In this document: piece by piece, positions 127-52,043 of the stretch | How the letters are laid out: each line of letters begins with the position of its first letter | Numbering within the stretch: the first letter of the stretch is position 1 | Assembly: GCF_003918875.1 (NCBI RefSeq) | Contig: NW_025767597.1 | Location: forward strand, 124,001-188,000 | Source: Haliotis rubra | Lineage: Eukaryota | Direction: 5' to 3' | Length of the DNA stretch: 64,000 nt | The notes under the pieces: model-generated | The model's database searches: none | Seen by the model: only the letters and a program-made list of their open reading frames with translations | What the model was told of the DNA's origin: nothing | Made by a program: the position numbers and the translations under genes

Positions 127-565
127 NNNNNNNNNNNNNNNNNNNNNNNNNNNNNNNNNNNNNNNNNNNNNNNNNNNNNNNNNNNNNNNNNNNNNNNNNN
201 NNNNNNNNNNNNNNNNNNNNNNNNNNNNNNNNNNNNNNNNNNNNNNNNNNNNNNNNNNNNNNNNNNNNNNNNNNNNNNNNNNNNNNNNNNNNNNNNNNNN
301 NNNNNNNNNNNNNNNNNNNNNNNNNNNNNNNNNNNNNNACCTTGCATTCAGTTCATATACATGCATGGAATATTTATCTCTAACAAATTAATGTTATGAT
401 TACATCCTGAAATCGTGGTCAACTTAATGTGCTGAAACTTGACATGATGTTGACAAGTTATGTTTAGAAGTGCTGATCGTGCACCTTACCCATACACGCT
501 ATCATCAGAATAAAATATAATTAGGTTGTACATGATGCTAACATAATCTACAAATAACAACTCAC

Positions 566-3500
566 AGAAATCCGTCCACAAAAGTATTAGTCATATTCAT
601 CACACCATGGTCAAAGAATGACCCCGTCTCTCCAAGCCAAAGGGGCGTCCCAGCAGGAGCATCTGACGTAGCGTTGCGTGCAATGTCCAGCGTCACCTTC
701 AGCCTGTCCATAAACACGGGGTCGGTGAAGTTTGCAAGTCGGCCTTCTTTGCCATTGCCGAAGTAGCTGTGACAGGAAAGAGTTCAGTTCAGAGTGCGTG
801 AAATATATACCACGTTTAGAAGGTGGTGTTGAACATTAATACTGTCATATAGTGTCAGCTCGATGAGGTAACCCCCGAGGTGAAACACACGAGGATGAAT
901 ATGATTGAACAAACCAATAAAAAAACACATATCTAAGGATACAACACAACAGAACTAACTGTGAATGCTGATGAGGGCTGCGCTACCTGAGGGCTGCACA
1001 GCCAAATCATGTCATGTAAGATTAATGTTTAATGAAACACTGACAAATGGTGCAATATCACGAATACTTATATGTTGTTGAAGTTTCAAGCATCGTGGAT
1101 GAGGAGACTCGTGGCTTTGAACCCACGATCAGCAGATCCCGACGCAGTATATTGTCTGGTGCATTTATACGCTCGGTCGTAAAGATAGTAGCATCCAATG
1201 GTTAAAGATAATTAAGTGAGTCAACAGATTATACATTTTCTTTCTGGAACACCCCCACCACACACACGATGCGATAATTAAGAACGTCGCCAGCACGCGT
1301 TATTATTGAGAGCTTATGACATATGTGCCCATGAATCAAACGTTTCCATGACGACGCCATCTGATGGCTCTACCAGCTGTACATTCAATGTACATATTGG
1401 AGTATATGACTTTCACTCACTGATGGAATGTAATGGCGTCCACGGATCGGGCACCTCCAGAGGTCAAGAAGCTATGGAACATAAAAACTGAATATTACCA
1501 TTGCATTTGTCTTGGTTTAAATTAGTAAGTCTTCATCTGAACATGTACAGAAGTAAATACAAGGAATACATAACGAAGTCCACACCTGTGTATAGCTCGT
1601 TTGTTAATGGTAATACATAATACATGTAATCAAGATGGAGTGTTTTGTTGATGATAATGAAAAACATACTCTTTCATGAATGAAATCCCCCTCTCGATGT
1701 AGAATATATCCGGCCCGAGTATCAATGTATCCTTAAAGTATGGACGCTTCCGCAGTTCATCGTGAAAAGTCAGGAAGTCTCTTCCAAGTTGCGAGCCGGA
1801 AATGCTTGTATTGTAATGATCCGGAATACTCAGGGGTTCTGCAGGAAAACATACCCATGCACATGCTGACGGTAATTGGAATTTAGTAAGTTCATGTATG
1901 GCGCGGGGGGCGAACTGGCTAAAGCGCCAGGCTAGTGATAAATAATAATAATAATGGATATTTTTAGCGCGCCATTTTCCACCCACTGATACATGATCCA
2001 GCGAGGTTGAGGTGACGGGATCGAGCCCACCTGTGACCGGGTGTAAAAACCTTGGAGTCAACTTTGTGTGCAGACTCTCTCAGTGTTGTCACAACCCCTA
2101 GTGTACAGTACACAACCCTGTGCACTTAAAAGAACCCACGAATCCGTTGGTATATGACCGGATGGTGGCCACATGAATACGTGCAAACACCCAGTTGCGG
2201 GTACAGCAACGTGCAGTAAACTTGGACAAAGTACTGTGACTATGTGTCCCAGTCCACCCAGCTGTGAATGGGTACCTCGTAAGGATGGGAATGCCACAAT
2301 AACTCGGTGCGCCTAGTGGCTGCAAGAGTTGTATGCTCCCCAGGGAGTTGAGATTGACAATGCTGGANNNNNNNNNNNNNNNNNNNNNNNNNNNNNNNNN
2401 NNNNNNNNNNNNNNNNNNNNNNNNNNNNNNNNNNNNNNNNNNNNNNNNNNNNNNNNNNNNNNNNNNNNNNNNNNNNNNNNNNNNNNNNNNNNNNNNNNNN
2501 NNNNNNNNNNNNNNNNNNNNNNNNNNNNNNNNNNNNNNNCCTACAACAAAGTGTAAGTCATTGGCAAACGAGGTATGTAGTAGTATCTATAGACTGAAGC
2601 AGGGAAGCAGATTCTATGACAAAATGATGATACATCGTATGTGCACCCTCGTACATCACCTTACAATGCATGACGATGTTTTTCCATAATATGGTATTTA
2701 AGATCATATTGCTCGCTGATCGTATCTTGAGTTAGACTAAACACTAAGATTCCTTGTATATTCCTACAAAGTAGGTCATTAATATATTTGTGAGATTGGA
2801 GATATTACTGGCTTACACACGTTTCTCATGGTCCCAAAGCAACATGTTACATATTGTTTTTATCGTTCGTGTTTCATCATTATGCCTTCGAAGGCCTTAT
2901 ACCATTGCCCAGTTCAAAGCCATAGATGTCATATCCTTTCTGGGTTGTGTAGTCGAGCAGTTGGTCGGCATTTGTAGGGTCCCAGCGTCCATCTTTCCGC
3001 TGCAGCACACTCAGACCAAAGATCAGGTCCCAGCCCACATCCCTGGTGAAATTGTTGATTTCGTCCCAAACATGAGCTGCAGTGTGAATTGATTTGAAAC
3101 CATATACAAGTATGTGTAGTATGTGTACAGCGAACAAACATGGATTATTGCTGTTTGAGAATGACATAGTGAATATTCCAGGTTGATTCCATTGATTCTG
3201 TATTTCAGATTAAATGATCGTTATCACCTGCAAATACTTAACATGGGTCAGCATTTACTCAACACTATGTAATTGTTTACACTAATCACCTGTGAGTACA
3301 CTGTCAGATACAGTCGGTGTCTTCAGACTTGGGTTGAACCTCACACCATCTGCATCCGTGCCCCCAATACGGAGTATACAGGGAGAAAACGCACGAGCAA
3401 GGGTCTTTAATTGTGGTGAACTGAAAATGCGTTCTCTAGAGCGTCACCAACATTATTTCACGCTAATGCTACCAACACTTAACACCATCACACTGTAATA

Positions 3501-6380: not shown

Positions 6381-9300
6381 TCAGTCCTGCTGACAGACAT
6401 CCACACCAGCATCAGGGAACACAACGAATCCGAAGGTCGTGGCTGGTATCTGGAGGCTCCCACCATAAGCTCGTTCGGGAGGCATTTCGGGGATGGTGTC
6501 GTTCACATAATCCAGTCGTTTGCCATTTAGAGTTACATTCCTGAAATTAAAACATCTGGGTAATAATATCTATCTTACCTCTTTGGCAGTATGGGACCAA
6601 ACCACGGTCTGCCAACAAGAACCCATCACTTATTCGTTCTACAAAAATGATACCATCTCTACCCTTGAGAGCAATGATGAAGCCACTGGACCTTATTGGT
6701 TGTTCAAGTGCTCAAAGTGTTCTGTATCTTTGTGATTTCAATATCAATTGTCAACTGAAGTAAATAATCAATCTAAATGATCACTTGACAGTAAATGGAT
6801 CTCTGAAAATCAGTGATGACACCAGGTGAGAAAACAGTAAGCATATTTGAAGTGTTGATACATATACTCACCTCGAAGTAAGATCTGGGAACTCTGGACT
6901 GAGCCAGAAAACATCCATATTGGTCTTGAACTGAGGGAAGTTGACGACGGTGGTGTAGTTGTTGACGTTGACGATATAAGCTACAACACTACCTGGTTGA
7001 TACCTGTAGGGACTGAAACAATACATCGTGGACATTGTGAGTAAAGCTGCAAGTTTGTTAAGAACATCACAAATCACCCACTTCCTCATGACAATACTGT
7101 CGGGCATGTTTGCCATGACAGTCATATATGGTTTAATTCTGCTTAAGTTAGTGACTAAGCATGACACATGCTGATAACCAACGTGACCTCTCCCTCCTTG
7201 ATGTTTTTGATTGACGATTCTGATTGATGAAATTATCCTACATCCCCCGTGTGATGAAGACACAATCCACCTTGTACCTTTCCTGTCTGGCACAGTGGGC
7301 GTAGACTCTGAAACTGTTGGTTGAGTTGGTCTGCACAGATAACACCTTGTACCCAACCAGCCTCTTATAGAGCAACGTCAGCCAGTAGTCCTGCAAATGA
7401 CACATTCAAGCGAATGTTAAATATGTGTCGGACATATAACGCTAACTTAGCTATGTCTGTTATTCCTGTAGTGGCGTAAAGTGGTGGCATAGTGGTACGT
7501 TACAGAATATCTAGTCTGCGATCAAGGACTGGCAAATTAAGTCAATACGTTTGTGTTAGCCTCACATTCAACATTATGAGAGTGGGTTAAGATCAACGTT
7601 GCTTGGAATGGTATTACATTGTGTCACAGCTTGAGACGAGGACAGTGTAATGTCAAACGTTTAATCATAACAGGAGGACATTGTCATTAGAACACATAAA
7701 CATGGGTTTCACGCCTGACTATTGCATTTTGGCACAACATATCGACCACATCGCACACACACATGTGCAGTCACACAGCGGACAAAGTGTAATAAAATGT
7801 ACAAATATACAAGTTTTGAGCTTCGTATTTAAATAGCGTGGAAGTAACAAGTAAGGTGAGAAAATACTTTTTCTATAACCTCAAGATATCGTTTCTGTTT
7901 TGCTGATATCGCATTGTTTATCAATGTTCATCACTTCACACAACAAAAGCGTCAGTGAGATGGAACAGTAATTGGTTCAAAAGACAATGCGCTTCAAGTT
8001 TTCGAAGGGGATAGTATGTATTTGTACCTACTGGGTAGGGATCAAACGTGTCCATCTCGATGAGTGAATAATTCTTTCCATAGAACGATTGTCTTAACAC
8101 CCCTTTAAGTCCCATCCGTGCTGCAATCCCGAGCTTGTCTAACCATCTGAAATATTGACAACAATACAATGTACTTGTTGGTGTATATATGATGCAGTAT
8201 GATGCAGTCATGTGACTAGGAAGTTATCTATACCTAGGGAAGTTTCAGCACATATAACCTGCATTAACACACTTGCGGTGGTGGTGGAATTGGATTTAAC
8301 GTCGTGCTTGAGAATATTTCGCTCATATGACGACGTGCATGCGTGTGTATGTGTATGTGCGGCTGCTTGTACTAGCCCAGACTGAAGCTGGTTTTATAGT
8401 GCTAGCTCACTGAGATACCATGCCGCAGTGAAGCATGAATACCCCACTCAGACACATTATACCGACTCCGAGCCGACCAGTCCTTGTTGTACCCATTAAT
8501 GCCGAGCGCCAGGCAGTGACCAACAAGTACCATATTTTAACGTCTTTTGGTATGACGCGGTCGGGGATCGAACCCGCGACCTTCCGCACTCCGGGCGGGC
8601 GTTCTAACGACTACACTACGGAGGCGGTCTAACACACTTGCATTGTTCGTAACGTTTAAGTTTCTTAATGCAGGTTATATGTGCATCAAATATCGGTTGT
8701 ATCAAGAGTCGCAGTTGTATATCGACATCGTTAGCTTCTCTTACCATCATTATGGTGTCGGGTATTGGTTCTTATACGGTGAAATCTCTTGATGCTGCTA
8801 TTTAAAGGCCGCCTGTATAATGCTGGAATACTGCTGATTGCGGGGTTAACGAAGTTGTAAAACTACACAAACATTGCACAGAAGGGATAGAACAAGTCAG
8901 CAGCCACATTTGAACAAATAAAACAAATAGGAATCCCATGTTTCTCATATACTTGAATAAATAGCGTCTATCGAGACGACAGATGTCACCAGTGAGTTTA
9001 TGTCATTTGTTGTTACTTCTTGTCCAGTGTGCAACCCCCAATTGCGTAGATCGATTCTCATACTCTTGATCATTGTCTGGTCGAGAATCGATTATTTACA
9101 GACCGCCGCCATAGGGCTGGAATAATGCTGAGTTCGACGTAAAACTAAACTACCTCACTCCAATGTTCAACCAACCGAGGCGGTTTTTGACCTACAAAGG
9201 TCATGCTTTTGTCAACAAGACCATTGTGCACTGATATTATTATTATTATTATAGTATATTTATATAGCGCACATATCCACGCAACTGGTGCATGCTCAAG

Positions 9301-12300
9301 GCGCTGGTATTTTTCCCTCGATCATTGGATGTCAATCTCAAAGGCACATGATATTATCATTCTCAACGCCCTTGGGAGTATATAACTCTTGCTGCCACTA
9401 GGCGTACCGAGTTATTCTGGCTTTCTCATCCTAACTGATTTTTTTCTTTCACCGTTCCCTGACTTCACTGACTAAACTCTTTCTGTCATCATTTGATTTT
9501 CCTGGTCAAGACTCGTTACTTACTTTCCTTCCATCTGTAGCTTAAATACTGACTTTCTGACAAAACAACATTTATTCAACTGGCATTGTGTAAGGCACAC
9601 AAAAGAGACGCTGACCATTTGTATACTAATATTGTGGTACGATACTCACAGAAAGCCGGCCACATATCTGTTAGAAAGTCCCGGGGCTCCCCCTCCCGAG
9701 AAAGACGATGTCTCACCGAGCCACATGGGAGTGTTGGGGTCGGCGGGGATGGTGATGTTGCGTACAGTGTCAATAGAAATTATTAAACGGTCCATCACTT
9801 CAGGGTCAATGAAGGTGCCCACTTTGGCAATGCCTTCGGGGCCGTAGTACCTACAAGTAATTAAACCAACATCCAATTAGGTTATAAGAGCTGAAATATC
9901 GTCTACCGTCGTATACAAGAAAAATAACAGGAGCCATGTTTAAACGTATTTCAAAGATTGTTATATGGCCGGGTATCAACCCGCCAGTTTTCTCCTCTAA
10001 GGGCAGTCACTCCACCCACTAGACTACATGGGAGAGCTTGCCGAAATTATGTATTCATGCTGCTATCCCTTATTGATTGAAGAGCTACAGCCTGCCAAAA
10101 TCCGTATATTTGAAAAGACAAGTAAGATAGCATACTCACTGGTGGAAGGATATTCTGTCGAGAGGTTTTCTTCCTTCCCCTTCAAAGAAACTGTAGAAGA
10201 TAAAATGTAAGTCTGTTTATAATGTCCCACCGGGAACATTAAGTATAATCATGTTATATACCTCTGATTTTCCAACACAGTATGTATTTGTTTAGAATTT
10301 TAATAACGCGGTTAAGGTAGAATAGAGATAAACATACTGTGTTGGAAAATCATCAGAGGTATATAAGGAAACTATAATGGCTCTTAAATAAAAAGCATTA
10401 GAGATATTATTACTTCGTTATATACCTCTGATTTTCGAACACATTATGCTTATCTCCAAAATAACTGAATGTTGACAGCCTGACTGTCAATACGGAGATG
10501 ATATCATCGTATCAATACGTATCAATACGATGCTGTGTCATGTCTCAGAGCCAAAATAACAATTATACTATTTTGCAGGATTTCTGTTTGTACGTTTCCA
10601 CTCACGTTTTAAGAAATTCTAATTTATGTCCAAAGACTGCTGTTACGTCGGGTCCGATCACCAGAGTAGAATTAAACCCGGGAGTAGACTTGAGGATTTT
10701 CCTCAGATGGACAAAATCTCGCCCCAGCTGTGTTCCAGATATTGTGTTGTTGAAGGGCGGGGGGAAACATGCAGGTTCTGGAGAACACAACAACATTAGA
10801 GTACAGTGTCTAGTATGTGAGTGAGTGAGTGAGTGAGTTTAGTTTTACGCCGCACTCAGCAATATCCCAGCTATATGGCGGCGGTCTGTAAATAATCGAG
10901 TCTGGACCAGACAATCCAGTGATCAACAGGATGAGCATCGATCTGCGAAACTGGGAACCGATGACATGTGACAACCAAGTCAGCGAAACTGACCACCCGA
11001 TCCCGTTAGTCGCCTCTTACGACAAGCATAGTCGCCTTTTATGGCAAGCACATGGGTTGCTGAAGACCTATTCTACCCCGGATCGTCTAGTATGTGACTT
11101 TTGCCATACATATACCTGCATTCATCAAGCACTCCACAGATGACTTTGATTTATGCATGAACTACAACGAGGGCATGTTTTGGTAGTTCGCCTTGATGAA
11201 AAAATAACGAAGAGGGGAATCTTGTACACAATGCTGCTGCAACACTGACAACGATGACAACGGGACTGTCGCTGGATCGTTCCCCTGTTCGTCGATCCAC
11301 TCTGTTCGTCGATCCGTCGATCCACGCAGGTTGACATCGGCATCGACGTCGCCAGACAAGACCACGTACATCAAGGACGTTAAACATGAAAGTACGATTG
11401 ACATCTGTGACCATACAGCTGTTGGAAAATGACGATTTGTAAGAAACGGCACCCCACATAGCCGTCCTGCATAGATAAGAGCTGCACATAGGCAGTTTCT
11501 GATCGTCTGAGCAGTAACTTGAGGTCCAGTAGCCTTATGTAAGTTTGCAGCAGTTTGAGTCGCTGTCTCACATCGATTGGTTATGCGTGGTTTCGGGTCA
11601 ATAGGCCCCTGTACTCTTGCGGTTGGCATAGGACTCCCTGAAAATGAACCCTGGTTTATCACGGGAATAATGGCTTTCCTAGAACCTGTTCCACAGCTTG
11701 CTACAACACACACTGGAACATTGTAGTACGTATTTGCTACCGTGATTCCAATGATTTCGTGTAGTTGGAATATTGCTGGGTGGGGCGTTAATCAACAAAC
11801 AAACTTTGGCATTGTACGCTGACTGCTGGGGAAACCGACAACCCCACACGCTGTGAAGATGGTGCATCGCTAGTGCATAAACAATTCAGACTGCAGGATA
11901 CGCAGAATGAGTGACAGACATAGTAGTGGTCAGCAGATACTCACTGACCTTCTTCAGAAGTTTCTCGCCGTGATATTGCTGGAATATTGCTAAAAGCGGC
12001 GTAAAACGATAACCACTCACTCCTCGGAAGTTTAAATCAGACATGATCATCTACACATGTGTTTGGCGCTACTCCTTGCGAATAGCGAACACTATCGGAT
12101 ATTTTGTGGAAAGTATTTACAGGCATAAATATTTTTGCATAGGATATTTGCCGTCAATAATTGTCATTGTTCTTTGGTATCAGGACTCAATCCTTTATTT
12201 CCAAGAGAACATTTATATCATTAAATGAGTTATAGAACAGTTGATCTAAAGAAACGCATAAACAGAGGCCCGATCCACAAAGCGTTCGCAGCACTACGTT

Positions 12301-13507
12301 ATTTATAGTCCAGTCAGTGTAACGCTATATAATGTCTACATAGTGTCATGACTTGCTACAAATCGGTGTGGTTATACTGCACAAAGGAATAGATCATTGA
12401 AATAAGCGCTGATCGCAACACAATATTATCAGGCTTTTAGTTATACACACAGATGCAAACTTTGAAGAGGGACAGATAATATGGCATACTGGTCTAAGCT
12501 TGATATACTATCAAATGAACTATTGGTATATACAATACCATTTCCGAGTTCAAATGCCGGTATGGTGTAGTTCCTGGAATTGGTATACTTCATCAGTTCT
12601 AAGGCGTTTGTAGGGTCCCATTGTCCGTCCTTTCTCTTCAGTACGTTGAGGCCAAACACCAGGTCCCATCCCACAATCGCCAGAAAGTAATTAAGATTGT
12701 CCCACATAGCACCTCAATGAGGAAAAATAGAAATGTATACTTCATACAAAACAGCCAGAATATTAATTTAAACAGGAATTATGTTGGTATACATATGTCC
12801 ATATCTGATTTATATGTCATAATTGAGGTATTATCCACACACTTAATGAGGCTTTCTTTATATTTTAGCCAGATGAAATCACGCTTCACGACAATACGTA
12901 AACCACTTTAGTTCCGGTTTCACCGAAATGAAAATAAAATGGCGATTATACGAACTAGGCAAACCAAACCGTTGAAAGTAATGAATCAGTTCAACATCAT
13001 CAGTTATAGTTGTCATGGCAACTATCGGGACACAGAAACATACCAGTATATGTGGAGTTTGCACTTCCACCCCCATGACCTGTTGGGTCAAAAGTCATGA
13101 AGTCCCCCGGCGTTCCCCCAATCCTCAGGTAGCATGGAGCCATTCCTTCCGCCAGGATCTGCACTTTGTGTGAGCTAGTTTTAAAATATTGTATCTTTTC
13201 AGAAACTGGAAACAGTTGCTTTGTATTCTAAGATGTAAGAGACATGTGCACCGTATTCATGCAATATATTATTTACCTAAAGCAATAAGAGTTATTTAAC
13301 TGTATTATGTAAGCCAGCTCACCTGAAATCAAGTCCATACCAATTAGCTGATATTGGTAGCATTGTTGAATCAAATGTCACTCCAACGAAACGGTTATCT
13401 ATCAATCCTATTTCTTTGTCTGTGGCAACAGTTACAGAAACAGATTGACTGTGTGTACATTGCATATACAAGGAACAGAGAATAACGAGCACACGTCTCA
13501 CATCCAT
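6381..13507 (-). CDS. HPSE-like: Heparanase-like GH79 copy B, 10 exons, ~480 aa, apparently intact
   Basis: Exons 13323-13507, 13044-13174, 12539-12712, 10606-10777, 10140-10190, 9650-9850, 8032-8146, 7278-7390, 6872-7012, 6381-6540 (sum 1443 nt). Motifs [14 protein letters not shown]|[55 protein letters not shown]. Confidence 0.93.
8277..8629 (-). mobile_element. tRNA-derived SINE, family 1, second copy
   Basis: Same head and body as 3573-3923; B box GGTTCGATCCC; (CCA)n tail; 12-bp TSD taacacacttgc (8265-8276 / 8630-8641). Confidence 0.9.
9234..9436 (-). mobile_element. 5'-truncated SINE family 3 copy with (TAA)n tail resembling the LINE 3' end
   Basis: Shares body with 2280-2355; its terminal gcatgctcaaggcgct matches gcatgctcaaagcgct at the 3' end of the LINE (19772-19788). 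Confidence 0.62.
10253..10457. repeat. Inverted repeat / MITE relic with a third arm copy
   Basis: ttatatacctctgattttccaacacagtatgt (10254) inverted at ~10332-10366 and repeated directly at ~10418. Confidence 0.65.
10821..11084 (-). mobile_element. (ACTC)n-tailed SINE-like element, family 2
   Basis: (GAGT)n on the + strand then conserved body ttttacgccgcactcagcaatat...ggtctgtaaataatcgagtctggaccag; 13-bp TSD gtctagtatgtga; about ten related copies in the window. Confidence 0.88.
11156..11900 (-). mobile_element. Decayed Tc1/mariner transposase relic in gene B intron 3
   Basis: Fragments TATQTAANLHKATGPQVTAQTIRNCL (Tc1 HTH), RGLVWRR...GER and FFHQGELPKHALVV (decayed FQQDNAxxH); several frameshifts. 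Confidence 0.7.
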
Positions 13508-21400: not shown

Positions 21401-24400
21401 GATGAGTGCAGCTATCTCACCCTCAGTGAAAGAATCAAAGGTGTCCAGGCAGATCCCATCATCGGGTGGGCATGTTGAAGGATCCTGTGTGTCAAGAAAT
21501 GTTTGGTCAAAGCTTTTCCTGATATTTTCAATTTTACTTGAGAAGTAGGCTGAAAAATTGTCAGCAAGATCCTTGTCATTAGTGGACGGTGGTAATGGGG
21601 TATCATTCTTCTTGCCAAGTAGAGATCCCATGAATTTGTGATAGAAGGAAGGATTTTTCACATTGTCAGAGAGTTTCTTGGTACAGTAACTGGATTTGGC
21701 TCCTCTAAGAGCCCTAGCACAAGAGTTCCGCTCAGACTTATACAACTGACGGTGAATTTCAAGGCGACTCTTCCGCCATTTTCTCTCTGCAGCTCTGCGT
21801 TTCCGCTTGGCTAAGAGAACCTGCTCATTATACCAAGGAGTCCCTGATCTGACAATTATTTCCTTCAGAGCTGATGGAGCATGTTTATCTAAGAGAGATG
21901 ACAATGTGGATGAATACAACTCAGCCAGTTGGTTTACATCATCCGGGGGGTCTTGGAGTAAGTCAGAGTTTACAAGATCTCTTCGAAACTCAACATTGTC
22001 AATAGACTTGAGATTACGACAGGATTGTTTGATAGTCTGACGCTGAGGTCTGTCCATACTCCAGGTCATAGAAACCAGAAAGTGGTCGGAAAGTTGTATA
22101 TCCTGCACATTGACAGAAGACACTAAGGAACTACTTTCAGAGGATATCACCCAGTCAAGGATATGGCCTCCTTTATGTGTTGGAGCATCAACATACTGAC
22201 ACAAACTATGTTGTTTCATCTTCTTTGTATCTGAGCACTGATTGTTATCGTAGTGAATATTAAAATCACCTAGCAAAATAGTGTTCAACTGATTGTACCT
22301 CTCAACGAGTACAGACAACTCACCATGGAATACAGAGGTTGAAAGTTGGTTTTTCTTTGACGACGGTGGACGATACAAACACACAACACGAGCACAAGTA
22401 TTTCCAGAACTAATTTTAGTGTTGATTGACTCAAAGCTTTTGAATTCTTCCAAATTGTCTAAACATTCTATCTGAATGTTAGACCTATGTATCACTGCTA
22501 CACCCCCACCAGCGCGCTGGGATCTTGGAGCATGTATGCAGCTGTATCCAGGGGGTGTCAGCTCAGCGATTTTCACTTCATCCCCCTCTTTTCGTAACCA
22601 TGTCTCAGTGAGAAAAAGAATGTCAATATCATTTTCCTGAATCAAATCAGATAGTTCCAAAGTCTTGTTTTTTGCATGATTGAACGTTTATCAAGGAGAC
22701 ACTGAGTGTATTTGGAAATCTTCTAGGATAAACTTGAACCAGGTTGTTAAAGTTAACACCTGACCTCCTTGTTCCATCGTCCTTGAATCACTTTAATCCG
22801 TTTTGGTATCTTTCTGCCAGCTCTACATCCTCTTCTGGTTCGCTTTCTTAATGAAATTCTAAGATTATTCAGATGGTGAAGTAGTTCAGAGTTATGTCCC
22901 TTGGCAGTTGTTCCAAGATGTGCACTTGAACACTTTTCACCAATGGCAAGCAGAGTCTCCCTGCTGTAGGCTATTGTTGACTGATTGATCATTGTTACAC
23001 TGGCCGAGTCAGCTTGGGTTTTGAAGGCCTCAGCTACACCCTTGATTGGTGGTGAACTCAAGTTGACAATAAAATCAACCTTTATGAATGAGATTATTAT
23101 ACACAAAATCCACATTTCAGTCCCCAAAGTCTCAAAAATTGCAGCAATGTGTGGAGGAAATGATCATGTACAATATGATCAACTTTGTAGAATCAAATTT
23201 GTACAATAATCCAGTGAAAAAGTCCAAGTTTGTGAGAGCACAAAAGACATGCTGCTGCTACCAAGCGCAGTATCATACATATTACTTATTCTATATCATA
23301 TAAGGTTGCGTTGTCTCAGAAAAAAACATTAATAACAATTATATTAATCACAAGAATGTCTGTTCACTCACGTTTTAAACAGAATTGATTTCGGTCCCGA
23401 GATGGCTGTTACGTCGGGTCCAATAACAAGGGTAGATTCAAACCCAGGAGTAGACTTGAGGATTGCCCTGAGATGGACAAAATCTCGCCCCAGCTGTGCT
23501 CCAGATATTGTATCGGTGAAGGGCGGGGGAAAGTATGCAGGTTCTAGAGAACAACCAGAGAACGTTTTCGTGGTATCAATTTGTAATACACAGAGATGAA
23601 GATTCCAGGAAGATTTATTATGGTAAACAAAGATGACATAGCTATGCATATTATCCAGTGAGCTATAGAACATTACAATACCATTTCCCAGTTCAAATGC
23701 GGGTATCTTGTAGTTCCTGGAAATGGTGTAGTTCATCAGTTCCATGGCATTCGCAGGGTCCCACTGTCCGTGCTTCCGCTTCAGTAAATTTAGGGCAAAC
23801 ACAAGGTCCCATCCTACAGTCTTCACGAAGTCATTTACGTTGTCCCACATAGCACTTCAATGATAAAATGAAGAAGTTTATAAGTCAGCTGAAAATATCC
23901 AGAATATTGCGTGTACTCATATAGTTAGCACAATCATTTGTCATTCATGCATGCTGAACGGTATGAATCAGCTAAGCACTACTTATTTAGTATTGTTATG
24001 GCATTATAGTAGAGCTGCAAAAACAATATACGACATAGGACATATAGCTATACCGGTGTAAGTGGAGATTGCACTTGTACCCCCATGACCTGTTGGGTCA
24101 AAGGTCATAAAATCTCCAGGTGTTCCGCCTATCCGCAGGTAGCACGGAGACATCGCTTTAGCCAGCGTCTGGACTTTAGGTGATCTAGTATTAAAGCAAA
24201 GTTTATTTTCAAAGTTGCTTTAATATTTATAAACTTCAAAGAATATGCACCATATGAATGTATTTCATTGTAAAACTCAAACACTTAAGAGCTATTAATT
24301 TATCTGTATGAAGTACGCCCACTCACCTGAAATCAAGTCCATACCAATTAGCTGATATTGGTAGCATTGATGAATCAAATGTCACTCCAACGAAATGGTC

Positions 24401-31300: not shown

Positions 31301-34300
31301 TAACGCCCCTTTAAGTCCGATCCGTGCTGCAATCCCGAGCTTGTCTAACCATCTGAAACATCGACGACAATACCATGTACATGTTCATGTCAATATACAA
31401 ATCATGCTTTGTTTTTGTTTAAATGAGTACATTATCTATACTATGATAGTGTTATAAGCTCCAGGCAGCAGTAACCCAGGGCTATCAATGACTATCAATG
31501 TGTGCGATTAGGTGCCTGACCCTGCAAGTGTGGGTTCGAATCCAGGATGGGACTTGACCCCATAGAAATGTACTAGAATCCGAACATTACTCAGAAGGTG
31601 TAATCCCAAATATAATTTACTGGACACTTTCTAAGAAAGCCTTCTGTTTTCAAACTTATATGTTAGTCATTAACTCGTGTGGTGCACAGTTTACCTGAAT
31701 TATCACACAAACTATGCAAAATATGATGCAATACACATATCTACAACTTCAGGTAAAAGAAGGTTTGTAAACCAGGGCCTCCTTTCACAAAGCACTAATG
31801 TGATCGTAAGTCCCTACGGTAACCTTAGTACAATGTTAAAGAATGGGAGTTAAGGTTATTCTTAGTAAAGGTTGCTTCGTGAAAGGACCCCCCTAACATG
31901 ACCGTTCGTTTTGTTTGAAATATATCCTTAAGTTTTGAGTCTGTGAATTCCGGGACTGCTTTGATTTGTAGGGCACGGTTCTAATGACAAAGTGTTAAAA
32001 GAGCTGACACAATGCATAATGGCGAGTGTACATGTAAGCCATCGTTCCTTGTGCATTTACTGCACTCATAATACCATCCTCCGGTTTTGCTGGTGTACTC
32101 AGCAGATACATTTTGAAAGCATACGAAAAGGAACGTTGACCTTTTGAATACTGACATACTCACAGAAAGCCGGCTACATATCTGTCAGATAGTGCCGGGG
32201 CTCCCCCTCCCGAGAAAGACGATGTCTCACCAAGCAACAATGGAGTGTTGGGGTCGGCAGGGGTGGTGACGTTACGTACAATATCAATGAATGTTATCAG
32301 GCTGTCCATCACTTTGGGGTCGATAAAGGTCTCCACTTTAGCATTGCCCTCGAAGTCGTAGTAACTAAACATTCAATTGATTTCGAAATTAGGTTTTGCA
32401 AAATGTGGTGTTTAAGGTCGCATGCAAAGGCAACAACAAGAACCAGATTTAAACATGACTTACAGTCCGTTTGGCTCAAAAGCGGACCGATGAATTGCAA
32501 TCTAACTCGAAAACTAATAAACATAACATACTCAATGAAACGCTGATCATAATCAAAACATCATACCAACTCTGTGAGGTTTTTGCAGAATTTTTGTCCT
32601 AAAAATAATAAAGTTGTTTAACAAACTATCATTAAAATATTGACACAGTTCACTGTTTGTTACGAGGGAGGAGTGCAGAGAAAGGGACAGCCGGGTGTTC
32701 GAGAAGCACGTTCACAGATAAAGTTATTTATTCATTAACCTGTGCTGTACCGTCTTCATCCGTTCTCGAACACCTGGCTGTCCCTTTCTCTGCACTCCTC
32801 CCTCGTAACAAATAGTGAACTGTGTCAGGACACCTGGGGTCGTCAAAGGGAAATGGAGTAGCCTCTCTTCCCTCTCAAAATAATGTGTGACATAGTTCAG
32901 CGTTGGTCCGGTAGACGTCAGGGCGCGGAGTGTATGCGAGCAATGTTCATATTGGATCGCTACTTTATATAATTCTTACAATCACATAGAACTTCCTAAG
33001 TTCCCAGACACATTTCTTCATTGTTTATGAAAGGCTGACGCAGAAAATTACCAAAATAAATAATAGTGTGTCATTGTTCAGAAAATATTTTTCCGTCGTA
33101 CTATGCCATTAACCTATTGACGGACTAAAATGACCACTTTGAGAAATCCAATTAAGTTCTCTGTTCTCCGTAAAATATTATCCGCATTAGAAAACATCTC
33201 GAACATTTGTGATTTATAAAGTATCTGCTGCCAAATACAACTAAACTAACTATAAGATAAGTAAGACAATGATACAAGACTACTCACTGGTGGAAGGTTA
33301 TCTTGTCTAACGCTTTTCTTCCGTCGCTTTCAAAGAAACTGTAAAAAATATAACATCATTCTCTTCATAATGACCTGCCAAAACTTAAGTGAGTGAGTGA
33401 GTTTAGTTTTACGCCGCACTCAGTAATATTCCAGCTACATGGCGGTGGTCTGTATATAATCGAGTCTAGACCACAATCCCGTGATCAACAGCATCAGCAT
33501 CGATCTACGCAATTGGGATGCGATGACGTGTGTCAACCAAGTCAGTGAGCCCGACCACCCGATCCCGTTATGACATGCATGGTTTACTGAAGACCAATTC
33601 TAACACGGATCTTCTCGGCTTCCAAAACATAAGGTATTAGGACGTACCAGTAGGGGCATGGTATATAATCAGTAGCATATATTACTTATTCTATATCATA
33701 TAAGGTTGTCTCAGAAAAAACATTAATAACAATTATATTAATCACAAGAACGTCTGTTCACTCACGTTTTAAACAGAATTGATTTCGGTCCCGAGATGGC
33801 TGTTACGTCGGGTCCAATAACAAGGGTAGATTCAAACCCAGGAGTAGACTTGAGGATTGCCCTGAGATGGACAAAATCTCGCCCCAGCTGTGCTCCAGAT
33901 ACCGTGTCGGTGAAGGGCGGGGGAAAGTATGCAGGTTCTAGAGAACAACCAGAGAACGTTTTCGTGGTATCAATTTGTAATACACAGAGATGAAGATTCC
34001 AGGAAGATATATTATGGTAAACAAAGATGACATAGCTATGCATATTATCCAGTGAGCTATAGAACATTACAATACCATTTCCCAGTTCAAATGCGGGTAT
34101 CTTGTAGTTCCTGGAATTGGTGTAGTTCATCAGTTCCATGGCATTCGCCGGGTCCCACTGTCCGTGCTTCCGCTTCAGTAAATTTAGGGCAAACACAAGG
34201 TCCCATCCTACAGTCTTCACGAAGTCATTTAGGTTGTCCCACATAGCACCTCAATGATAAAATGAAGAAGTTTATACGTCAGCTGAAAATATCCAGAATA

Positions 34301-34905
34301 TTGCTTGTACTCATATAGTTAGCACAATCATTTGTCATTCATGCATGCTGAACGGTATGAATCAGCTAAGCACTATTTATTTAGTATTGTTATGGCATTA
34401 TAGTAGAGCTGCAAAAACAATATACGACATAGGACATATAGCTATACCGGTGTAAGTGGAGTTTGCACTTGTACCCCCATGACCTGTTGGGTCAAAGGTC
34501 ATAAAATCTCCAGGTGTTCCGCCTATCCGCAGGTAGCACGGAGACATCGCTTTAGCCAGCGTCTGGACTTTAGGTGATCTAGTATTAAAGCAAAGTTTAT
34601 TTTCAAAGTTGCTTTAATATTTATAAACTTCAAAGAATATGCACCATATGAATGTATTTCATTGTAAAACTCAAACACTTAAGAGCTATTAATTTATCTG
34701 TATGAAGTACGCCCACTCACCTGAAATCAAGTCCATACCAATTAGCTGATATTGGTAGCATTGATGAATCAAATGTCACTCCAACGAAATGGTCATTTAT
34801 CAATCCTATTTCTTTGTCTGTGGCAACAGTTACAGAAACAGATTGACTGTGTGTACTTTGCACATACAAGGAACAGAGAATAACGAGCACACGTCTCACA
34901 TCCAT
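28375..34905 (-). CDS. HPSE-like: Heparanase-like GH79 copy D, 10 exons, apparently intact, C/E chimera
   Basis: Exons 34721-34905, 34448-34578, 34076-34249, 33766-33937, 33288-33338, 32164-32364, 31238-31352, 30370-30482, 29173-29313, 28375-28528. ELGN|EP and LLGETSS retained; GC donor at intron 9. Confidence 0.92.
28911..29049. repeat. 69-bp tandem duplication in gene D intron 9
   Basis: ctttatatagtgtgttatatacatg...gaatggcgactc occurs twice; single copy at the equivalent position in E (~38957-39025). Confidence 0.9.
30963..31142. repeat. 21-bp minisatellite, ~8.5 copies, gene D intron 7
   Basis: Same unit as 16934-17070 with a different copy number. Confidence 0.9.
32463..32828. mobile_element. 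Fold-back MITE of the same family, independent insertion, right arm truncated
   Basis: TA|cagtccgtttggctcaaaagcggaccg start; absent from copy C (empty site catgacttagtatg at ~18395-18408). Confidence 0.85.
33389..33620 (-). mobile_element. SINE family 2 copy in gene D intron 4
   Basis: (GAGT)n plus family-2 body; duplicate of 19431-19661. Confidence 0.8.
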
Positions 34906-38177: not shown

Positions 38178-38473
38178 TAGATGCCAACTTCTTTAATGTG
38201 AATGACACGACTCACTGCACTTCACCTGATGAAGGAGTAAGGATATATTGCGATTCGTGTCCCTCACATAACTGAAGTTGACATCCATAAGTGTTCACCC
38301 TTTCAGGCATTGGTCGGTATTTGCCATATTTAACTCAAACGTACTCGTGTAATATTACCAGTGTACGCTCTTTTACTCCTTGCGTTTGGTTGCAGGATAC
38401 AATTAAAAAGCCAACCTTGCAATGGAACTTTGTTTTAGTTCGCTACATATTACATCAAAACTACCAGTCAGCA

Positions 38474-44400: not shown

Positions 44401-46134
44401 AGTAGGACAAACCTCAGACTTCTGTAAATGACAAAAACCTGAATGTGAATTGCCTTTATATTGTACTGATGAATAAATCTGCTTGTTAATACTGTTATGA
44501 GGATGTGTTTGTGTTACTTATAATGTCACATTAATTAACCTTTCGTTGTTATGGACCACAAAAGTGTAAAGGGCTGAATGTGGATTTGAACTGGCATCTT
44601 GAACTTGGTTTAGACTGGTGGTGTGGCGTCGCTTTTGCTAGAGTGAGTGAGTTAAGATTTACAGTCACATCGACAATATTTCAGCCATATCGTGACTAAA
44701 ACAAGTTTAGAACTTTGCTAGAAATATCTAGAACTGTATGATAGGTATATACGGGATTGTTGTTGAGATGTAAGGGGGTAGTACTTTGGATTTACGCTCA
44801 TCTGTCTGCTGACACCGACGTGGCCTTGACTACATTGAACTTTCAACATCAATACGGTGATGGCTGTTACGTCGGGACCGATAACAAGGGTAGATTCAAA
44901 CCCAGACGTAGACTTGAGGATTGCCCTGAGATGGGCAAAGTCTGGCCCCAGCTGTGCTCTAATTGTAATGTTGAAGGGTGGGGGGAACCATGCAGGTTCG
45001 GGGGGAACAACATGAGAGTACAGAATATGGGATGTGACTTTTCACATACCTGTATTCATATAGAACATAGCTGACTTGGAGACATGTATGATTTAAAACA
45101 TGCTCTTTTAATAATACCAGGAATCCGGGAAGATTTCTAATATGGCATACAAAGACGACTGTTATAATTTACCAATAGGCTATGGAACTATACACTACCA
45201 TTTCCCAGTTCAAATGCGGGTATCCTGTAGTTCTTGGAATTGGTGTAGTTCATCAGTTCTATGGCGTTTGCAGAGTCCCATTGTCCGTCTTTCTGCTTTG
45301 ACAACACATTGAGGCCAAACACCAAGTCCCATCCAACAGTCTTCACGAATTCATTTAAATTGTCCCAAATAGCACCTCAATGATAAAATACATATTCATA
45401 ATTTGGCATGCGTGTTAGTAACTGTGATTGATTCTGGTCGTAAATATGAAGGTTTTTATGGTATGTGTCTAGGGTTCGTGAAAGATGATCTCACTGCTGA
45501 CAAAGTCGAGTTTCAACTTGCATGTGGCAATTAGAAACCGTAACGCTGTTTTCAACGCTGTTACTCCAGGTTACCCCGAAATGAAACTGTAACGGTCCTT
45601 ATGTTTCAAGTTATGAACCGGTCCCACCATTATTCACTGCAATGATTAGAGCTAGTCACAAAACGTACCAGGACATATAACTATACCTGTATATGTGGAG
45701 TTTGCACTTGTACCCTCATGACCTGTTGGGTCAAAGGTGAAGTAGTCTCCAGTTGTTCCGCCTATTCTTAGGTAGGATGGTGATATTGCTTTAGCCAGAG
45801 TCTGGACTTTAGGTGATCTAGTTTTAGAATATAAAATATTTTCAGAATCTTTACAATTATTAACCTTGGAAAATAGTCATGAATAATGTATATTGATTTC
45901 TGTCATTGTTAACTAATACAAGCTATTTATCTGTATGATGTAAGCCCACTCACCTGAAATCAAGTCCATACCAATTAGCTGATAGTGGTAGCAATGATGC
46001 ATCAAGCGTCACTCCAACGAAACGGTCATCTATCAATCCTATTTCTTTGTCTGTGGCAACAGTGACAGAAACAGATTGACTGTGTGTACATTGCACAAGG
46101 AACAGAGAATAACGAGCACACGTCTCACATCCAT
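38474..46134 (-). pseudogene. HPSE-like: Heparanase-like GH79 copy E, pseudogene
   Basis: Exon homologues 45954-46134 (181 nt, 4-bp deletion, stop at codon 32), 45687-45817, 45199-45375, ~44850-44998 (acceptor AG>CG, 3' end and donor lost), 43335-43385, 41370-41570, 40873-40987, 40364-40476, 39168-39308, 38474-38627. Confidence 0.88.
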
Positions 46135-50600: not shown

Positions 50601-52043
50601 TGAACAAGCAATGGCTTTTACTTATACACATAGACGAACACTCCAGGAAGAGGATCATTATGTTACACAAAGACGACTAGTCTACACTGAATATATGAAC
50701 CGTTGACATATACATTACCATTTCCGAGTTCAAATGCTGGTATTTTGTAGTTCCTGTCCTGGCTATACTTCATCAGTTCTTCGGCGTTTGTAGGGTCCCA
50801 TTGTCCGTCCTTCCGCTTCAGGACATTGAGGCCAAACACCAAGTCCCATCCCACAGTCTCCAGAAAGGCGTTAAGCTTGTCCCACATAGCACCTCAGATA
50901 TGAAATACACATGTTTATCATACAAGTGCTACGTTCTCAGCACGATAAAGCCAACGGAAAGACATTTTACCCTGATAAATATACTAATGTACAAAGTTCA
51001 CGTAAGAACTAGTTTCAATGTTTACAAACATTGTGTCGTCGTAATATAATTACAGTCCATTTAAAAAAATCAATTTTAGTGAGGATCGCTGATTTCAGAT
51101 TTCAGGTCCAGACTTGAAGTGCAGAAATTTGAACTGAACCTAATCTGGTTATTATTCAAATGTTCTTTAAAGCATGTCATTTTATGGATGAAAAGGCAAA
51201 GATACACTTTACACTTTACGATGGCTAATGAATGCGATGAACCTGTTTAAGGTCATGCAGTTATGACAGTCGTTACATTGAATACAAATCGAAAATATAT
51301 GCCATGTGCTCACACCGTGCTTCTCATGATCAATACAGTCAGTCAATACACAGTCATTGTAAATGAATGCCAACTCAAAGAGTTGATTTTTAATAAATAA
51401 AGAGCGGTATAAACTAATTCAACACGATTCATTTTGTTTGTTTTGACATACACCTCAAATATAGAAACATACCAGTGTATGTAGCGTTTGGACTTGTACC
51501 CCCATGACCTGTTGGGTCAAAGGTCATGAAGTCTCCAGGTGTTCCGCCTATTCTCAGGTAGCACGGAGACAATGCTTTTGCCAACGTCTGCACCTTGGGC
51601 GAGCTAGAAACAAATCTTATAATGAACTATGCACTCACAAGACAGAGTATATGTATTTGAAATTTAAAATTGATTACACATGTGTATGTCAAATAGCGTA
51701 AACATAACTATAATATATAACACATAAGTGAACTAGTATTCCCTCCTAGAATCTTAGCCTATCGAATTAATAGATTTGGGCCTAATTGGGAATCAAATCT
51801 CACGCCAGCAAAATGGTCATCTAAATGCTATATATCGACACTGTGTAAATTCACTCACCTGAAATCAAGTCCATACCAATTAGCTGATATTGGCAGCATT
51901 GTTGAATCAAAGGTCACTCCAACAAAATGGTCATCTATTGTTGCTATTGCCTTGTCCGTAGCAACAGTGACCGAAACAGACTGACTCACTGTACATTGCA
52001 CATGCAGGGAACATAGTATAAAGAGCATACGTTTGGTAGCCAT
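47660..52043 (-). CDS. HPSE-like: Heparanase-like GH79 copy F, 10 exons, apparently intact, compact introns
   Basis: Exons 51859-52043, 51473-51603, 50719-50892, 50068-50239, 49331-49381, 48975-49175, 48623-48737, 48399-48511, 48070-48210, 47660-47813. Motifs FELGN|[23 protein letters not shown]; GC donor at intron 9. Confidence 0.93.
49529..49690 (+). mobile_element. Degenerate SINE family 2 copy in gene F intron 4
   Basis: cccgtaaagatccgggttagaatttgatcttcagtaacccatg... with internal deletions. Further fragments at ~9040-9160, 28605-28755 and 38712-38832. Confidence 0.7.
49790..49978. repeat. ~190-bp imperfect palindrome (MITE-like)
   Basis: atgacaagaatttatggatgatcaactcctttattttgacaatggcgac... 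mirrored by ...gtcgccattgtcaaaataaaggtgttgatcatccataaagtcttgtcat. Confidence 0.75.

What the first reader, a model, noticed from the sequence alone, without database searches (positions are those of the whole stretch)
12539..13174. Natural linker-less heparanases: the proenzyme linker is replaced by a short Gly/Ser loop and its exon is missing
Seen: exon 2 splices in phase 1 directly to exon 3, giving [16 protein letters not shown]|GAMWD (B), [16 protein letters not shown] (D), [16 protein letters not shown] (F), [16 protein letters not shown] (G), FNPSLKTPTVSDSVLT (A). Established: human HPSE has ~50 extra residues between FDP and KNSTYS that block the cleft until removed by cathepsin L, and engineered (GS)n-linked single-chain HPSE is constitutively active. 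From memory, human coding exons of 174, 169, 94+107 and 115 nt match the 174, 169-172, 201 and 115 nt exons here, and only the symmetric phase 1-1 linker exon has no counterpart. Inference: these enzymes need no proteolytic activation, and the linker behaves as a modular exon.
Basis: partly seen in the sequence, partly recalled or inferred. Interest (0 to 1): 0.82.

Follow-up and report, generated by a model that had tools for sequence, protein, structure and literature searches.

The report
Abalone heparanase-like genes lacking the linker
Seven tandem abalone genes encode heparanase-like enzymes that really do lack the blocking linker of the human proenzyme, but this short form is the common state in non-chordate animals, and the chordate linker grew inside an existing exon rather than being a lost exon module.

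Summary
The window comes from an abalone (Haliotis) and carries seven minus-strand GH79 'heparanase-like' genes. In gene B, exon 2 (13174-13044) joins exon 3 (12712-12539) in phase 1. A spliced 1319-nt transcript contig from a related abalone shows exactly this joint. The protein has 47 fewer residues than human proheparanase between FDP and the first helix.

- The short loop is not special to these genes. A sponge, corals, a crinoid, a chiton and about 30 Haliotis paralogues have 27-33 residues where mammals have 75. Loop length changes many times on the tree.
- A rodent HPSE does have a 126-nt phase 1-1 linker exon with no separate counterpart here. However, its last nine codons (KEFKNSTYS) are homologous to the 3' end of abalone exon 2 (ANSTYT).
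- Amphioxus (236 nt), Lottia (188 nt) and a Haliotis paralogue encode longer loops in one undivided exon. Only Styela and the rodent have the linker intron. So the linker grew by expansion within an exon.

Activity without cleavage is plausible but untested. B, D and F look intact. C, E and G carry lesions. The proteins are acidic and lack the basic HS-binding cluster HBD-1, so heparan sulfate as substrate is doubtful.

The parts
6381..13507 (-). Gene B, complete CDS, 10 coding exons (13507-13323, 13174-13044, 12712-12539, 10777-10606, 10190-10140, 9850-9650, 8146-8032, 7390-7278, 7012-6872, 6540-6381). Encodes 480 aa with a signal peptide. ELGNEP acid/base and WLGETSS nucleophile motifs are intact.
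   Evidence: Exons 1-7 lie under a spliced transcript contig. Exon lengths equal those of the H. asinina orthologue P0152.
13044..13174 (-). Gene B exon 2, 131 nt. It starts and ends at the same positions and phases as the rodent 146-nt 'FDP' exon start and the rodent linker-exon end.
13045..13086 (-). Codons for PTGHGGGSANSTYT. This is the short Gly/Ser-rich turn plus the conserved N-x-T sequon that stand where the human linker lies.
   Evidence: In the AF2 model of the orthologue this is a hairpin: strand 89-91, turn, strand 103-105, pLDDT about 86.
12713..13043 (-). Gene B intron 2, 331 nt, GT..AG, phase 1. It holds no conserved coding segment.
12539..12712 (-). Gene B exon 3, 174 nt. It corresponds to the 174-nt exon of mammalian HPSE (human exon 5) and ends ELGN plus the first base of the acid/base Glu codon.
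   Evidence: (Pfam PF03662, 45.2 bits)
10140..10190 (-). Gene B 51-nt micro-exon (FFEGEGRKPLDRISFHQ). It corresponds to the 48-nt exon of rodent, Styela and amphioxus genes and is present in all seven copies.
34076..34578 (-). Gene D exon 2 (34578-34448), intron 2 (198 nt) and exon 3 (34249-34076). Gene D is intact, 478 aa.
50719..51603 (-). Gene F exon 2 (51603-51473), intron 2 (580 nt) and exon 3 (50892-50719). Gene F is intact, 478 aa.
23682..24184 (-). Gene C exon 2 (24184-24054) and exon 3 (23855-23682). The exon 3 acceptor reads AA instead of AG at 23857-23856. The reading frame is otherwise open.
45199..45817 (-). Gene E exon 2 (45817-45687) and exon 3 (45375-45199, 177 nt). The gene is broken elsewhere: a 4-nt deletion in exon 1, loss of the exon 4 acceptor, and a divergent exon 4 3' end.
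61170..61650 (-). Gene G exon 2 (61650-61519, 132 nt) and exon 3 (61344-61170, 175 nt). Each is one base too long at a run of G, giving two frameshifts.
2903..3420 (-). Gene A exon 2 (3420-3290), intron 2 (213 nt) and exon 3 (3076-2903). The loop reads FNPSLKTPTVSDSVLT|A. The gene runs off the window start.

Best explanation
These are secreted single-chain GH79 beta-glucuronidases from a large abalone-specific gene expansion. The loop between TIM-barrel strand 2 (..TFDP) and helix 2 (AMWDNL..) is in the short form common to non-chordate animals. It is a tight hairpin closed by an 11-residue Gly/Ser-rich turn that ends in a conserved N-glycosylation sequon. Because no helical lid can form from it, the cleft should be open as soon as the protein folds, so no cathepsin-type activation step is needed. 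This last step is inference. The chordate linker most likely arose later in the HPSE lineage by sequence expansion inside this same exon, a state still seen undivided in amphioxus. A phase-1 intron then split the expanded exon in the ancestor of tunicates and vertebrates, producing the 'linker exon'. The abalone genes therefore never lost a linker exon. Their -1 subsite motifs are conserved, which points to a glucuronide substrate. They are acidic and lack the basic HBD-1 cluster, so the natural substrate may be a less sulfated or non-GAG glucuronan rather than heparan sulfate. That too is inference.
For: Anatomy and transcript evidence. GH79 identity: Pfam PF03662 on exon 3; orthologues named heparanase-like carry PF03662. 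The AF2 model of orthologue P0152 has pLDDT 94.8. It matches proheparanase 5la4 (TM 0.90), mature HPSE (rmsd 1.4-1.8 A, TM 0.93-0.95 by target) and leech hyaluronidase 7eyo (TM 0.86). Loop length between two conserved columns is 28 in about 25 Haliotis paralogues and a chiton, 29 in a sponge, 31 in corals and 32 in a crinoid. It is 63 in amphioxus, 68 in Styela, 75 in mammals and 82 in lamprey. On the tree the long state marks a chordate HPSE clade (SH-aLRT 98), and length class changes at least 23 times overall. Exon maps: amphioxus 236 nt, Lottia 188 nt and the H. rubra paralogue each use a single exon ending after NFTMS/T in phase 1. Styela has 116+135 and the rodent 146+126, both with a phase-1 intron two to three residues before a conserved Cys. 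The sequon is conserved in the same columns in 62 of 102 sequences. Activity without cleavage is plausible for three reasons. GS3 single-chain HPSE is constitutively active. Leech hyaluronidase was expressed in active form and crystallised as one 496-residue chain with a 37-residue loop. The occluding loop of the exo-enzyme AcGlcA79A is 41 residues and that of GS3 is 32, against about 23 here. Acidic pI and missing HBD-1.
Against: No enzyme assay or protein-level data exist for any short-loop animal GH79 in what I could search. I could not inspect model coordinates, so an open cleft is inferred from loop length and secondary structure, not measured. The only transcript evidence is a contig about 90% identical from another organism code. 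Runs X1-X3 of the likely source species covered only intronic repeats. A sponge gene has a phase-1 intron inside the loop, 5 residues before NFTMT. An ancient intron lost in molluscs and amphioxus is therefore not excluded. Styela did not group with the other chordates in the quick tree because of a long branch.
Confidence: 0.7

Rival explanations
1. One reading: an ancestor had an HPSE-like proenzyme with a separate linker exon. The abalone lineage removed that symmetric exon as a module and replaced it with a Gly/Ser loop.
For: Apart from the linker exon and one fused pair (94+107 against 201), the exon lengths of rodent HPSE and abalone B match one to one. The rodent linker exon is symmetric, phase 1-1, 126 nt. 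Styela has the same kind of exon, 135 nt. A sponge gene has a phase-1 intron within the loop, so an old intron there is conceivable.
Against: The end of the vertebrate linker exon (KEFKNSTYS, first residues of the 50-kDa subunit) does have a counterpart here (ANSTYT) with a conserved sequon. Amphioxus, Lottia and a Haliotis paralogue carry loops of 63, 47 and 44 residues in one exon. Short loops occur in a sponge, corals and a crinoid.
Confidence: 0.08
2. A cryptic or alternatively spliced linker exon lies in intron 2, and the linker-less form is only one isoform.
For: Open phase 1-1 AG..GT segments of 132 nt (B) and 153 nt (F) can be drawn mechanically in intron 2.
Against: They are AT-rich and not conserved between copies. 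A, C and D have introns of only 198-216 nt with no such segment. The transcript contig joins exon 2 to exon 3 directly. None of about 30 annotated Haliotis proteins has an insert there. The 540-aa isoform differs only at the N-terminus.
Confidence: 0.03
3. The enzymes are not open-cleft endo-enzymes. They are exo-beta-glucuronidases or catalytically altered binding proteins, so the missing linker says nothing about activation.
For: Substrate and mode of action are untested. HBD-1 is missing and the proteins are acidic. Copy A has rewritten the Gly-rich loop after the nucleophile. Three of the seven copies carry lesions.
Against: Both catalytic Glu motifs and the GGGAP, NY and RIGGT motifs are kept in B, D and F. 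The model superposes on mature HPSE at 1.4-1.8 A. The loop that caps the pocket in AcGlcA79A is 41 residues and is far shorter here.
Confidence: 0.15

Closest known systems
Mammalian heparanase HPSE (GH79; PDB 5E8M mature, 5LA4 proenzyme)
   Same: Same fold: TIM barrel plus beta-sandwich, TM 0.90 to 5la4, rmsd 1.4-1.8 A to the 50-kDa chain, 34-41% identity. Same catalytic Glu pair. Nearly the same exon structure.
   Different: No 48-residue linker and no linker intron. No basic HBD-1 (KKFK becomes GGSA) and a weak HBD-2. pI 5.6-5.9 against 9.1-9.4. The 94 and 107 nt exons are fused.
Leech hyaluronoglucuronidase LHyal (GH79; PDB 7EYO)
   Same: An animal GH79 endo-beta-glucuronidase. It was expressed in active form (PMC3966032) and crystallised as a single chain. 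TM 0.86, 30% identity.
   Different: Its loop between FFD and the helix is 37 residues, 22 more than in abalone B. Its substrate is hyaluronan, whereas the abalone substrate is unknown.
GS3 engineered single-chain heparanase (Nardella et al. 2004, as cited in PMC3520799 and PMC4847616)
   Same: [quoted passage not shown] The enzyme is constitutively active.
   Different: It is artificial. It has 13 residues between FDP and NSTYS (KKE-GSGSGS-KKFK) against 8 here (TGHGGGSA), and it keeps the basic HBD-1.
Bacterial GH79 enzymes: Burkholderia heparanase BpHep (5BWI) and Acidobacterium exo-glucuronidase AcGlcA79A (3VNY)
   Same: Single-chain GH79 enzymes with no removable linker.
   Different: Only 17-21% identity. 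In AcGlcA79A a 41-residue loop at this place closes the pocket and makes the enzyme exo-acting.

Membership tests
Glycoside hydrolase family 79 | Sequence match to the GH79 N-terminal domain model (Pfam PF03662) | tested here: met
   Exon 3 alone scores 45.2 bits against a cut-off of 23.1. All close relatives carry PF03662.
Glycoside hydrolase family 79 | Retaining catalytic pair: acid/base Glu in the N-E-P motif and nucleophile Glu in G-E-T/S | tested here: met
   ELGNEP and WLGETSS are present in B, C, D and F. Both are invariant columns in the 102-sequence alignment.
Glycoside hydrolase family 79 | (beta/alpha)8 barrel with C-terminal beta-sandwich | tested here: met
   AF2 model of orthologue P0152 has pLDDT 94.8. 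Top PDB matches are 5la4, 7eyo, 5e8m and 5bwi. The fold was made on the H. asinina orthologue (88% identical), not on the window's own protein.
Heparanase in the strict sense (EC 3.2.1.166, HPSE-type) | Latent proenzyme with a linker of about 6 kDa that is excised to give 8 + 50 kDa chains | tested here: not met
   47 fewer residues than 5la4 at this place. The loop is 28 residues against 75.
Heparanase in the strict sense (EC 3.2.1.166, HPSE-type) | Basic heparan-sulfate-binding clusters HBD-1 (KKFKNSTYSRSSVD) and HBD-2 (QPRRKTAKMLK) | tested here: not met
   The HBD-1 place reads [16 protein letters not shown] with no Lys or Arg. The HBD-2 place reads TAVFGHKLEFLK. pI is 5.6-5.9.
Heparanase in the strict sense (EC 3.2.1.166, HPSE-type) | Endo-cleavage of heparan sulfate | not testable with these tools
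   Needs an enzyme assay.
Leech-type hyaluronoglucuronidase (EC 3.2.1.36) | Endo-beta-glucuronidase activity on hyaluronan; close sequence kinship with LHyal | tested here: inconclusive
   P0152 against 7eyo_A gives E 6.8e-66, weaker than to human HPSE (3e-90). Another Haliotis paralogue (P0174) is closer to 7eyo. Activity is not testable.

The most novel reading that the evidence does not exclude
The latency linker of heparanase is a chordate innovation whose origin can be read stepwise from living genomes. The steps are: a short hairpin (sponge, corals, crinoid, chiton, abalone); then expansion within the exon, including the conserved DIC cysteine (amphioxus, one 236-nt exon); then gain of a phase-1 intron (tunicate, vertebrates) that created the 'linker exon'. 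Abalone enzymes would then be natural, minimal, constitutively open GH79 scaffolds. Their expansion to more than 20 copies in a seaweed grazer would point to a new dietary or extracellular endo-glucuronidase system acting on something other than heparan sulfate.
Probability: 0.45. Interest if true: 0.5.

Novelty: new member of a known kind. Interest (0 to 1): 0.3.

Why it matters
Heparanase is a drug target, and its activation by removal of a linker is a textbook feature. This window shows that the linker is absent from most non-chordate homologues and that it grew inside an existing exon. That corrects the idea of a removable exon module and gives a concrete, testable order of events for how a zymogen arose. 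In practical terms, the abalone proteins (B, D, F) are candidates for easily expressed single-chain GH79 enzymes. Their acidic surface and missing HBD-1 suggest a different substrate worth assaying. None of this is surprising to a GH79 specialist, because single-chain family members from leech and bacteria are already known and these proteins are already annotated in sister species.

Tried and rejected
1. The spliced 480-aa protein of gene B has no single reference, so I did not hand it to the search or fold tools. I searched exons separately and used a profile of exon 6 (the 201-nt exon) from the seven copies for the representative search. I used the H. asinina orthologue P0152 for PDB search and folding.
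2. My first gene model missed the 51-nt micro-exon and misplaced the exon 9 acceptor. Both were corrected. Donors of intron 9 in C-F are GC, which my first script rejected.
3. Runs X1-X3 covered only intronic repeats, so there is no expression evidence from the likely source species.
4. No gene record was found for P0020 (Patella), P0203 (Mercenaria), P0199 (Dreissena) or P0211 (Mizuhopecten). The exon structure of the long bivalve linkers therefore remains unknown.
5. I asked whether Styela isoform X2 (484 aa) or H. rufescens isoform X2 (540 aa) skips or adds a linker exon. Neither does; both differ only at the N-terminus.
6. Literature searches for invertebrate, mollusc or Haliotis heparanase and for the leech-loop single-chain construct found nothing that discusses the linker in invertebrates. 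My recollection that Nardella et al. also used a leech hyaluronidase loop could not be checked and is not used.
7. No human genomic sequence was fetched. A Mus pahari locus served for the vertebrate exon map, and the human exon facts come from papers.
8. I could not measure cleft openness because model coordinates are not exposed.

Full report
WHAT IS THERE. The window is eukaryotic DNA (39-44% G+C, four N gaps). It holds seven tandem minus-strand copies of one gene: A near 0.6-4.4 kb, B 6.4-13.5 kb, C 15.5-24.5 kb, D 28.4-34.9 kb, E 38.5-46.1 kb, F 47.7-52.0 kb and G 54.3-62.7 kb.

For gene B I built a ten-exon model of 185, 131, 174, 172, 51, 201, 115, 113, 141 and 160 nt. It encodes 480 residues with a signal peptide, the acid/base motif ELGNEP and the nucleophile motif WLGETSS. 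Two corrections were needed on the way. A 51-nt micro-exon is present in all seven copies. The exon 9 acceptor also had to be moved.

The closest database proteins are RefSeq 'heparanase-like' proteins of abalones. H. asinina P0152 is 88% identical to B, P0151 is 91% identical to D and C, and P0157 is 91% identical to F. All carry Pfam PF03662. The genome is therefore a Haliotis; the species was not determined. P0152 maps on its own locus with exactly the ten exon lengths of my model.

THE OBSERVATION. Exon 2 (13174-13044) ends ...[16 protein letters not shown] plus one base. Exon 3 (12712-12539) continues [10 protein letters not shown]...ELGN. The intron is GT..AG, 331 nt, phase 1. The peptides quoted for D, F, G and A are also there.

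Against the PDB, exon 2 residues 2-31 match human proheparanase 5la4_A 44-73, and exon 3 residues 7-57 match 140-190. That leaves 19 residues here where the proenzyme has 66, so 47 are lacking.

Intron 2 measures 175-580 nt in the seven copies. In A, C and D (198-216 nt) no open phase 1-1 segment exists. The ones that can be drawn in B, E, F and G are AT-rich and not shared between copies.

In run X5, one 1319-nt contig (depth 75) lies on the minus strand over exons 1 to 7. Every joint is at the predicted GT..AG sites. Exon 2 (record 193-325) is directly followed by exon 3 (record 326-497). The 57 record letters between exons 4 and 6 account for the 51-nt micro-exon. The contig is about 90% identical to B and belongs to a different organism code, so it is a congener's transcript. 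Runs of the likely source species covered only intronic repeats.

STATE OF THE COPIES.
- B, D and F are intact.
- C is open, but its exon 3 acceptor reads AA.
- E has a 4-nt deletion in exon 1, has lost the exon 4 acceptor and has a divergent exon 4 end.
- G has one extra G in a G-run in exon 2 and another in exon 3, giving exons of 132 and 175 nt. These could be real frameshifts or homopolymer assembly errors.
- A runs off the window.

HOW SPECIAL IS THE SHORT LOOP? A profile of the 201-nt exon (exon 6) searched against 1.84 billion representatives, followed by a word search with P0002, gave 260 relatives. I counted residues between two conserved columns, the D of GDF and the F of the first helix (names).
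- 28: about 25 Haliotis paralogues and a chiton.
- 29: the sponge Geodia.
- 31: three corals.
- 32: the crinoid Antedon.
- 31-47: limpets.
- 63: amphioxus.
- 68: Styela.
- 75: mouse and tree shrew.
- 82: lamprey.
- Up to 92: the clam Mya.

The leech hyaluronidase 7EYO has 37 residues between FFD and the helix where abalone B has 15 and human has 63.

On a maximum-likelihood tree the long state marks a chordate clade of amphioxus, lamprey, an unnamed 541-aa Logan sequence and mammals (SH-aLRT 98). The three length classes need at least 23 changes in total. The window's genes sit inside a Haliotis-only expansion in which the loop is always 27-33 residues. The short loop is therefore the common non-chordate state, not a replacement of a linker.

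IS AN EXON MISSING? I did not fetch human DNA. I mapped a Mus pahari HPSE (P0102) on its locus instead. Its exons are 203, 146, 126, 174, 169, 48, 94, 107, 115, 119, 147 and 160 nt. It also shows a 126-nt phase 1-1 exon (DICRSEP...QYQKEFKNSTYS) with no separate counterpart in abalone.

Papers give the human facts. Exon 5 encodes 58 residues, including the codon of Glu225. Exon 4 ends after nine residues of the 50-kDa subunit. This is the same position and phase as the end of abalone exon 2.

Three results argue against a modular exon.
1. The last codons of the linker exon (KEFKNSTYS) align with ANSTYT at the end of abalone exon 2 and with NFTMT in most invertebrates. An N-x-S/T sequon occupies the same columns in 62 of 102 sequences, from sponge to mammal. 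That part of the 'linker exon' does have a counterpart here.
2. Longer loops are encoded without any extra intron in amphioxus (one 236-nt exon, 63-residue loop, already containing the DIC motif), in Lottia (188 nt) and in the H. rubra paralogue P0185.
3. A separate phase 1-1 exon occurs only in Styela (116 + 135 nt) and the rodent (146 + 126 nt). In both, the intron lies two to three residues before the conserved Cys.

The simplest history is expansion within the exon in the chordate stem, followed by intron gain in the ancestor of tunicates and vertebrates.

One caveat concerns the sponge. Geodia has a phase-1 intron inside the loop, five residues before NFTMT, and none after it. An old intron lost in molluscs and amphioxus is therefore not excluded. 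Even then the abalone exon would be a fusion, not the result of dropping a cassette. The coral gene has no intron from the start codon to ELGN and is uninformative on this point.

HOW IT LIKELY WORKS. AlphaFold2 on P0152 with 102 aligned relatives gave pLDDT 94.8 and pTM 0.93. Residues 89-91 and 103-105 form the two strands of a hairpin joined by the Gly/Ser turn, with pLDDT about 86. Foldseek matches proheparanase (TM 0.90), leech hyaluronidase (0.86) and the mature 50-kDa chain (rmsd 1.4-1.8 A).

In the human proenzyme the helical linker sits over the cleft. Replacing it with GSGSGS gives a constitutively active enzyme. In the exo-enzyme AcGlcA79A a 41-residue loop at this place closes the pocket, and GS3 has 32 residues there. 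Abalone B has about 23. Leech hyaluronidase, with 22 more residues than abalone, was expressed in active form and crystallised as one chain. I therefore infer an open cleft and no need for cleavage. This is inference, not measurement.

The motifs around the -1 subsite are kept (RIGGT, NE, GETSS..GGGAP, NY). The basic cluster HBD-1 is absent, HBD-2 is weak, and the mature proteins have pI 5.6-5.9 against 9.1-9.4 for mammalian HPSE. The name 'heparanase' may therefore not describe the substrate.

COMPARISON AND VERDICT. These genes are members of GH79: the family model, the catalytic pair and the fold were all tested and met. They are not heparanases in the strict sense by two tested features, the linker and the HS-binding clusters. 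They work like known single-chain GH79 enzymes.

The papers I could search do not discuss the linker in invertebrates. A 2025 review treats HPSE evolution without it. The fact is nevertheless plain from public annotated proteins. I rate this a new member of a known kind, of modest interest. The useful additions are the corrected evolutionary reading, the doubt about the substrate, and the observation that abalones carry a very large GH79 expansion.

Noticed in passing
L-free: proteins P0195 (Mya), P0203 (Mercenaria), P0199 (Dreissena), P0086, P0220; also P0272 (lamprey): The long loops of a well-supported clade containing the bivalves Mya, Dreissena and Mercenaria (plus unnamed P0086 and P0220) carry polybasic motifs. 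Examples are RRSKRD-IGFY, RRRKRD-VGYY, KRRNKRD-IGYW and KRQRRD-LGYS, a few residues before NFTMT. They look like proprotein-convertase sites, which would suggest an independently evolved, furin-type activation linker. Lamprey HPSE has RRQRQR in its linker.
   Followed up: partly
window 23856-23857 (gene C): The exon 3 acceptor of copy C reads AA instead of AG, while the whole reading frame stays open. This is either a very recent inactivation or use of another acceptor.
   Followed up: partly
window 38465-46141 (gene E): exon 1 near 46085, exon 4 44848-45000: Copy E is a pseudogene. It has a 4-nt deletion in the signal-peptide exon, has lost the exon 4 acceptor (CG for AG), has a 3-nt deletion, and has a divergent exon 4 3' end.
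   Followed up: yes
window about 61582-61590 and about 61258-61266 (gene G): Each of exons 2 and 3 of copy G has one extra G in a run of G (six and five G), giving two +1 frameshifts. Both lie in homopolymers, so assembly error is as likely as decay. My single read-laying run was already spent.
   Followed up: no
window 15899-15900, 29172-29173, 39167-39168, 48069-48070: Intron 9 has a GC donor (AG|GCGAGT or AG|GCAAGT) in copies C, D, E and F, but a GT donor in B and G.
   Followed up: partly
window 8291-8684, 10852-11048, 11837-12033 (introns of gene B): These intronic stretches are covered at summed depths of thousands to nearly 100,000 by contigs of all four runs laid, with many loose ends at 11966/12007. 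They are high-copy, probably transcribed repeats (transposable elements).
   Followed up: no
window 565-765 (gene A, 201-nt exon): Copy A reads WLGETGSFFDHGVMNMT where the others read [15 protein letters not shown]. The Gly-rich loop that binds the glucuronate carboxylate in HPSE is rewritten. Its H. asinina relative P0003 belongs to a separate clade.
   Followed up: partly
whole window and relatives: Abalones have an unusually large GH79 family. More than 20 distinct 'heparanase-like' proteins lie on one H. asinina chromosome, against 1-4 GH79 genes reported for other molluscs (PMC7560691).
   Followed up: partly
L002 (Pocillopora verrucosa) 2036-2176: The coral gene has an extra 141-nt exon that repeats the segment after GPDV (a second GPDM... 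stretch). This is an internal duplication of the HBD-2 region. The coral gene also has no intron from the start codon to ELGN.
   Followed up: no
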